From the NCBI RefSeq assembly GCF_964204865.1, contig NC_135257.1:16182001-16246000 (forward strand): 64,000 bases of DNA. Direction: 5' to 3'. Shown here in pieces: positions 1 to 5,600 of the stretch; position 1 is the first letter of the stretch; each line of letters starts with the position of its first letter. The notes under the pieces were generated by a model that saw only the letters and a list, made by a program, of their open reading frames with translations, ran no database searches and was not told the DNA's origin. The stretch comes from Styela clava. Taxonomy: Eukaryota. A program made the translations under genes and the position numbers.

Positions 1-17
1 AATAATATTTTTCACAG

Positions 18-406
18 TCAACCCTGGAGGTGGTGGTGGAGCCGGCGGCGGTGGGGGAGGAGGCGGAAAACGCGCTGGAGGAGGAGGAGCAGGTAAAGGA
101 GGAGGTGGTGGTGGTGCCGAGGACTACGGAGACCCAGGTTTTGGGGACTACGACGGCGATTACTACTACCCAGGAGGTGACGTTAAAGCGAAATCCTGTA
201 TTACACCTGAAGGCCAAGAAGGACTGGATGCATTTGCCTGGGTCAAGACGCCTGGTGAATCTGATGGTCGCATGTTTACTGCCGGTACCTTCCATCCGTG
301 TCTCTTGGGTCATATTATTGAATGCACTGATACTTGTCCCCAATATGTACCTAAATTAAGTGGAGAATTTCAAAGGAGCGATTCGTGTAAATGCATAGAC
401 GACTAA
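18..406 (+). CDS. Terminal exon of a glycoside hydrolase family 6 (cellulase-family) domain protein: tunicate GH6-1 or the C-terminal GH6 domain of cellulose synthase CesA. The upstream exons lie outside the window.
   Basis: Acceptor ttttcacAG ends at 17. The frame starting at 20 is open to TAA at 404-406: NPGGGGGAGGGGGGGGKRAGGGGAGKGGGGGGAEDYGDPGFGDYDGDYYYPGGDVKAKSCITPEGQEGLDAFAWVKTPGESDGRMFTAGTFHPCLLGHIIECTDTCPQYVPKLSGEFQRSDSCKCIDD*. LDAFAWVKTPGESDG (224-268) matches the GH6 C-terminal signature DA[F/Y]xWxKxPGESDG. Confidence 0.85.
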
Positions 407-714
407 TTAGATCCGAAATTTTAACGGGCGATAAATACAATTTTTAAATTAAAATTGAAGTTTTAATTCGAGTCAATTATATATTATAATTTATCTTTTC
501 GAAATCTTTTTAAGTGATGAAGTGCTTTCCATTACGTGGATATTCCTTTTATTGCATATAAATATCGTGTGCCTACAAGTTTTTGTGATGCTCTTGTGTA
601 TTTTGCAAAGGGATCGTTAAGTGATGGTTTTCAATAACTTGAGAAAAGCGCCTTTATGTTGAACATTTTACTCGTTTTCATAACATTGAGGATATTGAGT
701 CATTCCAATTTGGG

Positions 715-920
715 ACGCTCCAGAAGTGTGGGTACAAATATAGAGGTAACTAATTTTGATCACCTACTTCAAATCAAGTTGTGTAAAGTGACTGACGCTT
801 ATGGGCAGGGGTTCACTTGGCTAGCACAGGCAGTCCCCGAACTCGTAATAGAACTAAAATAGGGAAAAACGGAATTAAATTATGGCCTAACTCTAACCTG
901 GTATACACACTACTTGAATA
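715..920. repeat. Degenerate copy of the foldback/MITE-like family carrying a cctaaccctaacc motif
   Basis: Shares gtccccgaactcgtaatagaact...aaattatggcctaactctaacctggtatacac with the copies at about 8050-8140 and 26125-26200. Confidence 0.65.
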
Positions 921-1238
921 CCCAATTCGGTGCACTAAAGATCCATTTTCTCTCCTTTAATTAATATATAGCCTGCTAATGTTTGCAAACTAATCGCACA
1001 GTAAAAATCAAAATGTATACATCTGTCCAAACAACATATATATTTACGCCAGGAAATCCTGGATAATAATTCCAGACGCAGGAATTCCGTAGCCATAAAC
1101 GCCAGAACAAATCAGTTACGTTATTGGTATCTCGGCATTCGTAATTTGGCATGCACCATATCGTTGACAAAGAATGCCAATTTGACCAAGATTGCTAGAG
1201 TTTGATCCTATCAGTAAGGTACATCTCATACTTTATAC

Positions 1239-2606: not shown

Positions 2607-5600
2607 TTAGAGATCAGTCGCAACTATACCAAATTCCTCAAGTTTGTAAGTATTTTTTAATATTTCTTGTTCGTCCGGGCCGTGCGTATCCTTGTCTATT
2701 ACTGGCTTGCGGGGACTAGTTTGTCTTTGATCATCGGTTATGTTTGGCACAGGGCGGCACAATTTCTCAAAATCGAGTTTTTCTATAGACGCCACGAATG
2801 ATTCCGGTGTCATGCCTATTTCAGCAAAAATACTCGAGTGCAGTTTGCTGCTAAAGTCTGCCGGCAGTGACCCGTAACCGAATTGCCACCTTTCCCGCCT
2901 TTCGTGACTCGTTGTTCCAGTACGACGACGGGTATGTGCATTCTGTCCATCGCGTCTGGCACGTGTTCTCGGTGGTTTGGTTCGCGATTTCTTCATATTA
3001 GTTTTCTCATTGTGCGAAATTGAAATATCGAAATCTTGAGAAGAACCTGGTTGGTAGGATTTCGGTCTTCCTGGTTTTACGTATATTGGCACTTCCATGA
3101 TAGTTTCGCTTCTTACGAGCCCACTTGCTTTTATAGGTTGTGGATTTATAGGGGCTTTTTGATGCAACTCAGTTTGATCTATGTTTACCGTGTTGGCATC
3201 TCTAGTAACTTTATCTAGCTTACTTTGACTCCGTATAGCGTCATGGGGAAGAGAATGTTTTTGGCTGCTATTCCTATTCAAGTTGCTAAAAGATTTCTTG
3301 GCTATAAACAAATGCGCATCACTTGCACTACGTTTCTTTTTTGATCGAGGTGGTGGGATCGGCATGCTGGTAATTGCCTGGCTTTTGCCTTTCTCTGGTA
3401 ACGTTGCTGTGCAGCTGAGACTTCTGGTTATAGGTTTACGTAAGTTTTTAGATTTTATACTCGGGATGGATGCCGTAGCATATTTGGTTTTATGATTAGA
3501 ACTTCCTCTTGTTGCTGCTTTCGTTTGATGCTTGCGACGACGTCGTTTCTTTTCCGCCATTTTCCTACTCGAATATCTTCCACCTGTCGGTCTTCGTGAC
3601 ATAATGTTCTGATGATGCTGATAATCTGACGACCCTTCCATGTCTGAAACATAATCGGAGGTTATACTTGGCTTGCTTATCACTTTTGCCGTTCTCCTAT
3701 AATCACTAGTATTGCTTCTTGTTCTTGAACGAAAACTATCCATCATGTTTTCATCCTGTGGAATATTCCGCCACTTTGATAGTCTCATATGTTCAACGTA
3801 GTAATAATCCGGTGGTGGACGCGTGTTAATTTCTGGCACACTCAAGTTATGTGCATTTCTTAAATTTTCTTCATCAGAGTATTTCCGATTGTTGTTATAA
3901 ATTCCGTTATTCCCTTCAAATGCTTGATTCGTCCGACCCTGGTTATTCTTATTTCTTCGAATGTCATCAAACTCGTTTACAAATCCGGTTGGAGGAGCTT
4001 GCACTACTGGAGGAAATTTAGTTACTGGTTCATTATTCATGCCAGGCGACGAACTGTACCCAGATTCGGTATCCCCACAACACTTATCTCTCCACCAATC
4101 AACGGTTAATCTCTTTCTCAGCCTGTAATAAACAAATATATATAATATATATAACCTGAATACCACAACAAAGTTTTTATTAACGTTAGAAAAATAAAGC
4201 AAATTTGCTCCCATTCAATCAACGATGTGTTACACTTGATGATAAATGCCTGTTTAGTGGTTACCCCTACTTAAAGTGGGGCTTTGCTAAAAATCGACTT
4301 GTAACCAGTAATGCACAAATAGCGGTCCTAAATTAGTAAGACAGTCTTAACTAGGAATAGATATATCTATGCCATATATCTATCGCTATTAAGACTGTCA
4401 GTGGTGGGATTCAGCCGTTCGCACCGGTTCTATAGAAACGTCTCACGGAATTTCATGAGATCAGCGAACCGCTTAGCATTACTGGTTAATGTCAATGACT
4501 TTTTGTAACAGACCCGGGTGAAAAATATGACTTTTGTGATGGAACCGTCTGACTAAAAAATTGAATCCCACCACTGAAGACTGTATATTATATGGCATCA
4601 ACCGCAATTTGGATGGTTTCAGGCTCTACATTACATTGTCGTACGACAAGAAATGAAAAATGCTTACCATGAAAATATCCCAAATACAATAGTTGAAACG
4701 AGGCATACTGATACAATTGAACTTGTCACTGACTGCGATGAACTTCCAATGTCTGTAAAAGTTGAATAATATTTTTAAGCAAAAAACATTTGGTGACAAA
4801 TTCCAACAGTTTTTCATGACAGTTGATCCCGATAAACATGCTTCCAAAATCATACAAGTTTTAACACGATACATTAATTCAAATTTTTACCTGAATTAAA
4901 TTGATTATCTGTGTCTTCCAGATATCCTATACGCCAACTCCGCTAACATTTTATGTGTAGGCTATATATATTTACTGCACCATGTGGTGCAAACGTATAC
5001 CATCGGCATAAAAAGATTCTATATTAAAATCTCTGCATTTTTAGTTATTAAGTCATATTACTAAAGTTGTCTTAAGTTATATCCAAGTTAACTCGAAAAT
5101 ATCTGCTGATCACACATTTTTATTTTTTCCAAAACACGCTTAAGGGTGAAGTGAACATAACTTACTGCCGTAAAGGTATTTTTTCTTTAAATGGATAAAT
5201 AAATTGTCATTTTTACTTACCAACATTTGTCATCATATCCAATTTTCTGCGTTGATTATTGCTTAAATGTGCTATATTTATCCACAGGTATCGTAGTATA
5301 CTTGCAATTTTCTAAGCAGAATCAAGTTACCTTACGTACAAACGCAGCAATCAATGTGTTGTCATACACAATTTGAGCCTTCGTACGGACTTAACGAAAA
5401 CAAAACGAGCTAATACGCTGCTATTGTTGTACTTTCTTTGTCCGTTGGTAACTGAGGACGTCCCATCAAGTATCGTATGCCGCGTCAGAATTAAGACATT
5501 GTACTCGACTAATTTATTCACAATACAAGCTTTCGTGAACCCTCGTCACTATAGATCAACCTTTTGTAAATACAAAGGTGGGGACATCTGTTATGTGATA

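What the first reader, a model, noticed from the sequence alone, without database searches (positions are those of the whole stretch)
18..406. Hidden GH6 cellulase-family exon in an animal genome (bacteria-to-tunicate gene transfer marker)
Seen: the ORF track reads this region in the wrong frame. The frame opened by the acceptor at 16-17 encodes GLDAFAWVKTPGESDG, the GH6 C-terminal signature, with its Asp residues intact. Established: GH6 is a bacterial/fungal cellulase family. Among animals it is essentially restricted to tunicates, either fused to CesA or as the stand-alone GH6-1 gene, both attributed to horizontal transfer. Inference: this is the intron-containing 3' end of one of those genes, and it identifies the genome as tunicate.
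Basis: partly seen in the sequence, partly recalled or inferred. Interest (0 to 1): 0.8.

Follow-up and report, generated by a model that had tools for sequence, protein, structure and literature searches.

The report
Last exon of sea-squirt cellulose synthase

Summary
In the frame of window position 20, bases 18-406 encode a split Val codon plus 128 residues and a stop, including GLDAFAWVKTPGESDG. This matches Pfam Glyco_hydro_6 (E 3e-4) and actinobacterial GH6 endoglucanases in the PDB.

Spliced transcript contigs from three studies join an upstream exon to window base 18 exactly, with AG at 16-17. They chain nine exons through eight GT..AG introns. A DNA run shows none of these joints.

The upstream exons carry a GT2 cellulose-synthase domain (DDG, DAD, TED, QRSRW) and transmembrane segments. 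Further GH6 exons follow, in which the catalytic EPD reads EPS. The gene is therefore CesA, the GT2-GH6 fusion, and not the stand-alone GH6-1.

GH6-1, with EPD intact, lies on another contig. Over the stretch searched it is 100% identical to Styela clava LOC120346095, so the genome is a tunicate, very probably S. clava.

13 of 14 exonic variants between runs are synonymous, which argues against a pseudogene.

Small additions:
- A six-cysteine C-terminal tail is shared by CesA and GH6-1 and is absent from the bacterial GH6 compared here.
- A low-complexity insert sits at the same point of the GH6 domain in both paralogues.
- The poly-Gly run is absent from the closest orthologue found.

Verdict: real, correctly interpreted, already known, low novelty.

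The parts
1..17 (+). 3' end of the last CesA intron. The intron is G000:C9:16181673-16182017 (345 nt) and ends in the polypyrimidine tract and acceptor ttttcacAG, with AG at 16-17.
   Evidence: The joint L014 4670>5016 (cut +2) reads GT..AG in contigs of runs X1, X5 and X9 and is absent from DNA run X12. Intron ends are GTAACA...TCACAG.
18..403 (+). Coding part of the terminal CesA exon. Bases 18-19 complete a split codon (G|TC, Val) and codons run from base 20, giving 128 residues. It encodes the C-terminal end of the GH6-like domain.
   Evidence: The frame is open and matches the frame imposed by the transcript joints. Orthologous ORFs match at E 7e-37 to 5e-23. All four variants between runs in this exon (49, 106, 145, 208) are synonymous third-position changes.
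26..181 (+). Low-complexity stretch: a Gly run (GGGGGAGGGGGGGGKRAGGGGAGKGGGGGG) followed by an acidic, Tyr-rich run (AEDYGDPGFGDYDGDYYYPGGD). It is the 3' part of an insert of about 150 residues between the 'C-x-x-DPP' segment and the GH6 C-terminal motif.
   Evidence: Translation. No Pfam or PDB match covers it. In the closest orthologue, P0001, an Ala/Lys-rich run stands in place of the Gly run, while acidic Tyr-rich segments recur in P0001, P0004 and P0011.
209..277 (+). GH6 C-terminal motif GLDAFAWVKTPGESDG(RMFTAGT). D, W, K, PGE and DG are all conserved.
   Evidence: PF01341 profile positions 276-298 align to residues 64-86. The motif aligns to T. fusca E2 'iDAFlWiKlPGEaDG'. D, A, W, K, P, G, E, D and G are invariant across 12 tunicate and bacterial sequences.
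197..394 (+). Six conserved cysteines: C60 before the motif, then the tail HPC-LLGH-x3-C-x3-C-PQYVPK...QR-x3-C-x-C. This tail is tunicate-specific and replaces the last helix of bacterial GH6.
   Evidence: C60, C94, C102, C106, C123 and C125 are invariant in 7 CesA last-exon sequences plus this genome's GH6-1, and are also present in a second GH6-1 orthologue, P0013. None is present in the 11 bacterial loci inspected; the bacterial matches stop at about residue 94.
404..406 (+). Stop codon TAA.
   Evidence: All orthologous ORFs end within a few residues of the C-x-C motif.
407..671 (+). 3' untranslated region, minimum extent.
   Evidence: The transcript contig of X1 covers L014 5050-5671 and that of X5 covers 5016-5562 (table 8). 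The poly(A) site was not determined, because contigs cannot show ends.

Best explanation
Window 18-406 is the terminal coding exon of the single cellulose synthase gene (CesA) of a stolidobranch ascidian, very probably Styela clava.

Gene structure. The gene spans roughly G000:C9:16173400-16182700 on the + strand. The transcript-supported part is nine exons, L014 252-1003, 1245-1397, 1759-2025, 2212-2442, 2661-2800, 2889-3169, 3519-3682, 4550-4672 and 5018-5406, where L014 position 1 is C9:16177001. Further 5' exons are inferred from open frames only.

Mechanism. These steps come from knowledge of BcsA-type GT2 synthases and from the tunicate literature; none was shown here. The cytosolic GT2 domain, with its D, DxD, TED and QxxRW motifs, polymerises UDP-glucose into beta-1,4-glucan. 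The chain is passed outward through the channel formed by the flanking transmembrane helices. The C-terminal GH6-like domain lies outside the cell.

What this exon supplies. It closes the GH6 fold. It carries a disordered Gly/Asp/Tyr-rich loop, the conserved D-A-x-x-W-x-K-x-PGE-x-DG strand and loop that lines the glucan-binding cleft in true GH6 enzymes, and a six-cysteine tail that is probably disulfide-bonded.

Likely role of the domain. The catalytic acid is lost (EPD reads EPS), and by eye the signature-1 Asp is lost too. The domain most likely does not hydrolyse by the normal GH6 mechanism. It more probably binds or guides the nascent glucan during microfibril formation. I put that last step at about 0.5; nobody has tested it.
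For: Shown here:
- Exon, frame and stop.
- GH6 matches.
- Eight GT..AG joints in contigs from three independent studies, none in the DNA run.
- All nine exons open in the joint-imposed frame.
- GT2 hits: PF13632 at 1.4e-16, PF13641 at 1.3e-9, PF03552 Cellulose_synt at 6.6e-7.
- Motifs HVYVLDDG, AIFDADF, CLTED and QRSRW.
- A loose end of the transcript contig reads ...AIFDADFMP, which ties the DxD exon to the chain.
- Hydrophobic segments before and after the GT2 domain.
- EPS in CesA aligns to EPD in GH6-1.
- 13 of 14 exonic variants are synonymous.
- Only one GT2 copy was found in the genome.
- Orthologous last exons are 61-79% identical, and cluster members lie on contigs up to 4.4 Mb.
- The GH6-1 paralogue is 100% identical, over the stretch searched, to S. 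clava LOC120346095.

Literature:
- CesA with a C-terminal GH6-like domain is found in all tunicates and no other animals (PMC6523144, PMC7464555).
- The catalytic Asp is absent from CesA-GH6 but present in GH6-1 (PMC7464555).
- The GH6 domain is described as extracellular and the N-terminal extension as cytosolic (bioRxiv 10.64898/2026.09.16.752152).
- CesA is required for cellulose production and metamorphosis (Sasakura 2005, as cited in PMC13390645).
Against: Nothing argues against the gene identity. The limits are as follows.
- The exon alone scores below the Pfam gathering cut-off (21.1 against 27 bits).
- The runs are only guessed to be RNA in their records. Their cDNA nature is inferred from the splice joints.
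- The 5' exons and the start codon are not supported by transcripts here.
- Topology rests on a crude hydropathy scan and on a preprint's statement.
- Exons d and e, which carry the degenerate signatures 1 and 2, give no Pfam or PDB GH6 hit on their own. The EPS assignment therefore rests on the alignment to the paralogue.
- No biochemical data exist on what the GH6-like domain does.
Confidence: 0.96

Rival explanations
1. The exon belongs to the stand-alone secreted GH6-1 gene rather than to CesA.
For: The exon alone cannot tell the two apart. GH6-1's last exon is 44% identical to it over 66 residues and has the same Cys tail.
Against: Transcript contigs chain it to GT2 exons. The same domain has EPS rather than EPD. 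GH6-1, with a signal-anchor-like N-terminus and ILEPDLL, is on another contig (C1) and equals S. clava LOC120346095.
Confidence: 0.01
2. The match is bacterial contamination, a dead relic or pseudogene, or a chance similarity in a low-complexity region.
For: The Pfam score of the exon alone is under the cut-off. The first 55 residues are low-complexity. The GH6 catalytic acid is lost.
Against: The locus lies in a 23.8 Mb contig with spliceosomal GT..AG introns and interspersed repeats. Spliced transcripts are seen in three studies. 13 of 14 variants are synonymous. The tail is strongly conserved across at least five other orthologue clusters.
Confidence: 0.01
3. Functional rival: the CesA GH6-like domain is still an active glucanase that uses another residue as acid. 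It would trim or edit the nascent chain, as the Korrigan or BcsZ cellulases do in plant and bacterial cellulose synthesis.
For: The cleft motif D..W.K.PGE.DG, including the Asp equivalent to T. fusca Cel6A D265, is invariant. Purifying selection acts on the domain. PMC7464555 notes that conservation around signature 2 may mean retained or new function, and that cellulase is needed for cellulose synthesis in plants.
Against: The catalytic acid Asp is replaced in every tunicate CesA examined (PMC7464555; EPS here). Signature 1 is not conserved (PMC7464555). A separate GH6-1 with EPD intact exists and could supply hydrolase activity (PMC10334666).
Confidence: 0.25

Closest known systems
Tunicate cellulose synthase CesA (Ci-CesA of Ciona, BAD10864.1; Nakashima 2004, Matthysse 2004; orthologues in all tunicates, PMC6523144, PMC7464555)
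   Same: It has a GT2 domain with D, DxD, TED and QxxRW motifs and flanking TM helices. A C-terminal GH6-like domain sits on the same spliced mRNA. The catalytic Asp of GH6 signature 2 is lost. The gene is single-copy and contains introns.
   Different: Nothing differs in kind. Features particular to this gene are a poly-Gly run at the start of the last exon and an insert of about 150 low-complexity residues, spread over three exons, inside the GH6 domain. Whether the whole insert exists in Ciona CesA could not be checked, because no full-length reference protein was fetched.
Tunicate GH6-1 (stand-alone GH6 gene; PMC7464555, PMC10334666); here Styela clava LOC120346095 at G000:C1
   Same: It shares the GH6 fold segments, the six-Cys C-terminal tail, and a low-complexity insert at the same place between 'C-x-x-DPP' and the 'DA..W.K.PGE.DG' motif. 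The last exons are 44% identical.
   Different: GH6-1 has no GT2 part. It has an N-terminal hydrophobic anchor, keeps EPD, has a Q/N/P-rich rather than Gly/Asp/Tyr-rich insert, carries a further C-terminal extension of about 80 residues, and lies on another chromosome-scale contig.
Actinobacterial GH6 endoglucanases (Thermobifida fusca Cel6A/E2, 1TML/2BOD; Mycobacterium tuberculosis CelA1, 1UP0)
   Same: These are the best solved-structure relatives of the two GH6 exons that score: E 3.6e-6 for exon f and 3e-4 for the last exon. The shared segments are YVDAG, DTSRNG and DAFxWxKxPGExDG.
   Different: The bacterial enzymes are intron-less soluble hydrolases with EPD and RDC Asp residues. They pair the Cys after GE(S/A)DG with the WCNP Cys, end in an A-x-x-LA helix, and have neither the insert nor the six-Cys tail.
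Bacterial BcsA and plant CESA cellulose synthases (GT2, PF03552/PF13632)
   Same: They share the processive GT2 catalytic core and the QxxRW motif.
   Different: They have no fused GH6 domain. According to PMC7464555, a GH6-like domain at the C-terminus is unique to tunicate CesA.

Membership tests
Tunicate CesA (GT2-GH6 fusion cellulose synthase) | GT2 catalytic domain with D, DxD, TED and QxxRW motifs | tested here: met
   PF13632 at 1.4e-16, PF13641 at 1.3e-9, PF03552 at 6.6e-7 on exon a. HVYVLDDG, AIFDADF, CLTED and QRSRW are read in the exons.
Tunicate CesA (GT2-GH6 fusion cellulose synthase) | GH6-like domain C-terminal to GT2 on the same mRNA | tested here: met
   Single spliced contigs (X9 record 15, X1 record 1, X5 record 13) run from the GT2 exon through the GH6 exons. 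The joints continue to window base 18. PF01341 scores 42.3 bits on exon f and 21.1 bits on the last exon.
Tunicate CesA (GT2-GH6 fusion cellulose synthase) | Transmembrane helices flanking the GT2 domain | tested here: met
   A Kyte-Doolittle scan finds at least 1-2 hydrophobic segments in the inferred exon E before GT2 and 5 after it, in exons a, b and c. The method is crude and no dedicated TM predictor was available.
Tunicate CesA (GT2-GH6 fusion cellulose synthase) | Catalytic Asp of GH6 signature 2 (EPD) replaced, as in all tunicate CesA (PMC7464555) | tested here: met
   SIIVMEPSLLMH in CesA aligns to SIVILEPDLLMF in this genome's GH6-1.
Tunicate CesA (GT2-GH6 fusion cellulose synthase) | Spliceosomal introns and residence in an animal (tunicate) chromosome | tested here: met
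   There are eight GT..AG introns in a 23.8 Mb contig. The paralogue is identical, over the stretch searched, to a Styela clava RefSeq protein.
Tunicate CesA (GT2-GH6 fusion cellulose synthase) | Cellulose synthase activity and epidermal expression | not testable with these tools
   Only the presence of transcripts was shown. Tissue and activity are unknown here.
Glycoside hydrolase family 6 (PF01341), as an active hydrolase | Sequence membership: match to PF01341 above the curated cut-off | tested here: met
   Exon f scores 42.3 bits against the 27-bit cut-off. The own-genome scan gives 35.4 bits, over the cut-off. The last exon alone scores 21.1 bits, below the cut-off.
Glycoside hydrolase family 6 (PF01341), as an active hydrolase | Catalytic acid Asp in signature 2 (H. 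jecorina D221) | tested here: not met
   The sequence reads EPS instead of EPD. The same is reported for all tunicate CesA (PMC7464555). The domain should be filed as GH6-like, not as a proven cellulase.
Glycoside hydrolase family 6 (PF01341), as an active hydrolase | C-terminal Asp and Lys/Glu of the D-A-x-x-W-x-K-x-PGE-x-DG motif (T. fusca D265 region) | tested here: met
   These residues are invariant in alignment A2 with bacterial GH6 and in the alignment to 2BOD/1TML.
Tunicate GH6-1 (stand-alone) | No GT2 part; N-terminal signal or anchor; EPD retained | tested here: not met
   The window's exon is spliced to GT2 exons and its domain has EPS. The true GH6-1 is at G000:C1.

The most novel reading that the evidence does not exclude
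CesA-GH6 and GH6-1 share two derived features that the bacterial GH6 compared here lack. One is a six-cysteine C-terminal tail, C...HxC-L-x2-H-x3-C-x3-C...C-x-C. The other is a long low-complexity insert at the same point of the fold, between 'C-x-x-DPP' and 'DA..W.K.PGE.DG'.

If both are true synapomorphies across tunicates, including larvaceans and salps, they favour one of the scenarios that PMC7464555 left open: a single GH6 transfer, remodelled in the tunicate stem and then duplicated, with one copy fused to or kept with GT2.

A text search of that paper for 'cysteine', 'low complexity', 'disordered' and 'insertion' found no mention of either feature.
Probability: 0.35. Interest if true: 0.3.

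Novelty: already known. Interest (0 to 1): 0.15.

Why it matters
CesA is the classic case of a horizontally acquired bacterial gene that shaped an animal body plan, through the cellulose tunic and the control of metamorphosis. Recognising its last exon identifies the genome as tunicate and shows that a reader without tools can find split, intron-containing HGT genes.

Scientifically it adds little. The gene family, its GH6-like end, the loss of the catalytic Asp and the separate GH6-1 gene are all published, and the species' genome is already annotated.

The only mildly new points are the Cys-rich tail and the same-site insert shared by the two tunicate GH6 paralogues. Both bear on whether there was one transfer or two.

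Tried and rejected
1. Pfam and PDB searches with the short GH6 exons d (76 aa) and e (46 aa) gave no GH6 hit. The top hits were spurious: a viral phosphoprotein at E 0.01 and DUF2635. The EPD-to-EPS call therefore rests on the paralogue alignment.

2. My first Pfam call on the 5' ORF pieces failed on an off-by-one coordinate. I repeated it correctly. The 5' pieces gave only sub-threshold noise, so the N-terminal exons remain inferred.

I could not fetch the genomic context or the organisms of the orthologous ORFs P0001-P0005. The listing of cluster members gave no names.

4. The own-genome PF01341 scan found only the CesA locus. GH6-1 was found only with the CesA exon as a protein query. The family scan is therefore insensitive to this divergent, split gene.

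5. The bacterial search uses exact back-translated patterns, and only 11 loci were inspected. Absence of the Cys tail in bacteria is therefore suggestive, not proven.

6. I made no phylogeny. The exon pieces are 50-90 aligned residues, too short for a meaningful tree, and the question is treated in PMC7464555.

7. All searches were exon by exon, so there is no whole-domain structure prediction and no full-length comparison with Ciona CesA.

8. I did not use the large HMMER search (search of protein representatives), because the family scans left nothing open.

Full report
**1. The observation**

Bases 1-17 end in ttttcacAG. From base 18 the frame whose codons start at 20, 23 and so on is open to a TAA at 404-406. 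It reads NPGGGGGAGGGGGGGGKRAGGGGAGKGGGGGGAEDYGDPGFGDYDGDYYYPGGDVKAKSCITPEGQEGLDAFAWVKTPGESDGRMFTAGTFHPCLLGHIIECTDTCPQYVPKLSGEFQRSDSCKCIDD*.

The mechanical ORF list gives its longest ORF here (30..359) in another frame, and only 272..406 of the true one.

- Pfam Glyco_hydro_6 matches residues 64-86 to profile positions 276-298 of 305, at E 3.1e-4 and 21.1 bits. That is below the 27-bit cut-off because only the tail of the domain is present.
- phmmer against PDB sequences finds only GH6 enzymes at the top. These are 6fao and Thermobifida fusca E2/Cel6A at E 2-3e-4, with GLDAFAWVKTPGESDG aligned to iDAFlWiKlPGEaDG.
- By the chain numbering printed, the second Asp aligns with E2 residue 265. From my own knowledge this is an essential active-site Asp of that enzyme.

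**2. The surroundings**

The window is G000:C9:16182001-16246000, in a 377 Mb genome of 380 contigs. I fetched 30 kb upstream. Open frames on the same strand show the hallmarks of a processive GT2 synthase: HVYVLDDG, AIFDADF, QTPQFF...CLTED...QRSRW. They are followed by hydrophobic exons and then GH6-like exons.

**3. Transcript evidence**

Nine runs from three studies hold about 30-48% of the sampled words of a 6 kb stretch, L014 = C9:16177001-16183000. That is what an mRNA would hold. Four runs of one further study hold 77-91% and behave as genomic DNA.

I laid X1, X5 and X9, one per study, plus X12 as the DNA run. The first three show the same eight joints, all GT..AG. X12 shows none of them and covers the introns.

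After the stated cut shifts, the exons in L014 coordinates are 252-1003, 1245-1397, 1759-2025, 2212-2442, 2661-2800, 2889-3169, 3519-3682, 4550-4672 and 5018-5406. The split codon is G|TC, Val.

All nine exons are open in the frame the joints impose. A loose end of the contigs upstream of the first of these exons reads ...VAIFDADFMP. It maps to the DxD exon, whose donor is CAG|GTACGG.

The run records are only guessed to be RNA. The splice joints are what show they are cDNA-derived.

**4. Domains, exon by exon**

- Exon a: PF13632 at 1.4e-16, PF13641 at 1.3e-9, PF03552 (Cellulose_synt) at 6.6e-7.
- Exon f: PF01341 at 1.1e-10 and 42.3 bits, above the cut-off.
- Last exon: PF01341 at 3.1e-4.
- Exon f's best solved relative is Mycobacterium tuberculosis CelA1, at E 3.6e-6. 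Fungal Cel6A enzymes score about 0.1-0.8.

A hydropathy scan finds hydrophobic segments before GT2 and five after it. The gene is therefore the GT2-GH6 fusion, CesA.

The genome holds a single copy of the GT2 exon.

**5. Selection**

Of 14 exonic differences between the runs and the assembly, 13 are synonymous third-position changes in this frame. The other is Ile to Val. All four in the last exon are synonymous. This supports the frame and argues against a pseudogene.

**6. CesA or GH6-1**

Using CesA exon f as a query, a second GH6 locus appears at G000:C1:4479109-4488908 on the minus strand.

- Its first exon begins MAMSKKCFVFALCVIVAIIVGAVIFVVIQ..., a hydrophobic anchor.
- It contains SIVILEPDLLMF, with the catalytic Asp intact.
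- CesA has SIIVMEPSLLMH at the aligned place.
- The locus is 100% identical, over the 81 residues searched, to 'uncharacterized protein LOC120346095' of Styela clava, 637 aa with PF01341.
- Read against the fetched protein, the locus differs by one residue.
- S. clava is a stolidobranch ascidian.

The genome is therefore tunicate, very probably S. clava, and the window's exon is CesA rather than GH6-1. This pattern, Asp lost in CesA-GH6 and kept in GH6-1, is the one published for tunicates (PMC7464555).

**7. Relatives of the exon**

A word search restricted to residues 56-128 found five clusters of short ORFs at E 7e-37 to 5e-23 and 61-79% identity. Cluster members lie on ENA contigs of up to 4.4 Mb. 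These are evidently the same terminal exon in other tunicate assemblies.

- The alignment shows C60, D70, A71, W74, K76, P78, G79, E80, D82, G83, R84, G89, C94, L95, H98, C102, C106, Q118, R119, C123 and C125 invariant, with this genome's GH6-1 included.
- A second GH6-1 orthologue, P0013, has the same cysteines.
- Eleven bacterial loci found by pattern scan match only to about residue 94. After GE(S/A)DG they continue with x-C...AGQFW...A-x-x-LA and have no such tail.

**8. The insert**

In bacterial GH6 the segment WCNPxGRxLGxxPTTxTG runs straight into xxVDAFVW.

- In CesA, the matching ECTYDPPMVEKGDTPSWQTG of exon g is followed by about 150 low-complexity residues: the rest of exon g, all of exon h, and the Gly and Asp/Tyr runs of the last exon. 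Only then comes CITPEGQEGLDAF.
- In GH6-1, CYFDPPRV is likewise followed by about 190 Q/N/P-rich residues before CIRLEAVRVHDANVW.
- The Gly run itself is not found in the closest orthologue, which has an Ala/Lys-rich run there. Acidic Tyr-rich runs recur in other orthologues.
- No length variation of the Gly run was seen between runs (table 4).

**9. Mechanism**

Shown here:
- The gene structure and its expression.
- The domain content.
- Loss of the catalytic Asp.
- Conservation of the cleft motif and the tail.

From established knowledge and the literature:
- GT2 polymerisation and translocation proceed as in BcsA.
- The GH6 domain is extracellular and the N-terminal extension cytosolic (bioRxiv 10.64898/2026.09.16.752152).
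- CesA is required for cellulose and metamorphosis (Sasakura 2005, via PMC13390645).

Inferred: the GH6-like domain binds or guides glucan rather than cutting it, at about 0.5, against residual or altered hydrolase activity at about 0.25.

**10. Comparison and novelty**

This is an ordinary orthologue of tunicate CesA, and all defining features that could be tested were met. The gene family, its origin by HGT, its GH6-like end and GH6-1 are all published (PMC7464555, PMC6523144, PMC10334666, PMC13390645, PMC10950049).

The shared Cys tail and same-site insert are small additions. Text searches of PMC7464555 for 'cysteine', 'low complexity', 'disordered' and 'insertion' found nothing.

Noticed in passing
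G000:C1:4479109-4488908 (- strand); loci L020, L021: This is the stand-alone GH6-1 gene, in four coding pieces, with an N-terminal hydrophobic anchor and ILEPDLL intact. It has a Q/N/P-rich insert of about 190 aa and the same six-Cys tail as CesA. It equals Styela clava LOC120346095 (637 aa), apart from one Leu/Pro difference, and so names the genome.
   Followed up: yes
G000:C9:16155656-16159657 (+ strand), i.e. 22-26 kb upstream of the window; locus L013: A multi-exon rhodopsin-family GPCR (PF00001, E 5e-8 and 6e-7 on two exons) lies on the same strand, about 14 kb upstream of the presumed CesA start. PMC7464555 reports a Molgula oculata CesA gene model with a rhodopsin-like GPCR domain merged at its upstream end. 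The GPCR-CesA neighbourhood may therefore be conserved among stolidobranchs, and the Molgula model is probably a merger of two genes.
   Followed up: partly
window 706-927 and 1239-1500; also L014 4000-4600 (window -1000..-400, inside the CesA intron before the second-last exon): These are interspersed repeats. The two window segments each have 20 or more copies at 79-89% identity across many contigs. The intronic segment reaches word depths of about 30,000-160,000 in the DNA run, against about 45 for single-copy sequence. The families were not classified.
   Followed up: no
window 26-118: A GGN-rich tract encodes 30 residues of nearly pure Gly. The closest orthologous ORF (P0001, 79% identical downstream) has an Ala/Lys-rich run instead, so the tract looks like a recent expansion. 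The three variants seen inside it (49, 106, 145) are all synonymous.
   Followed up: partly
window 2607-4214 (- strand): A 535-aa ORF, rich in Ser, Arg, Lys and Asn, lies on the opposite strand just downstream of CesA. Its only Pfam hit is a sub-threshold Dishevelled-domain match (E 0.007, 17 bits). Its identity is unknown.
   Followed up: no
G000:C9:16162622-16163134 (window -19378..-18866), locus L012: A long compound microsatellite, (TG/CA)n followed by a repeat with an 8-12 nt unit, translates as CVCV.../MYVCMYVC... in all three frames. It lies between the GPCR and CesA.
   Followed up: no
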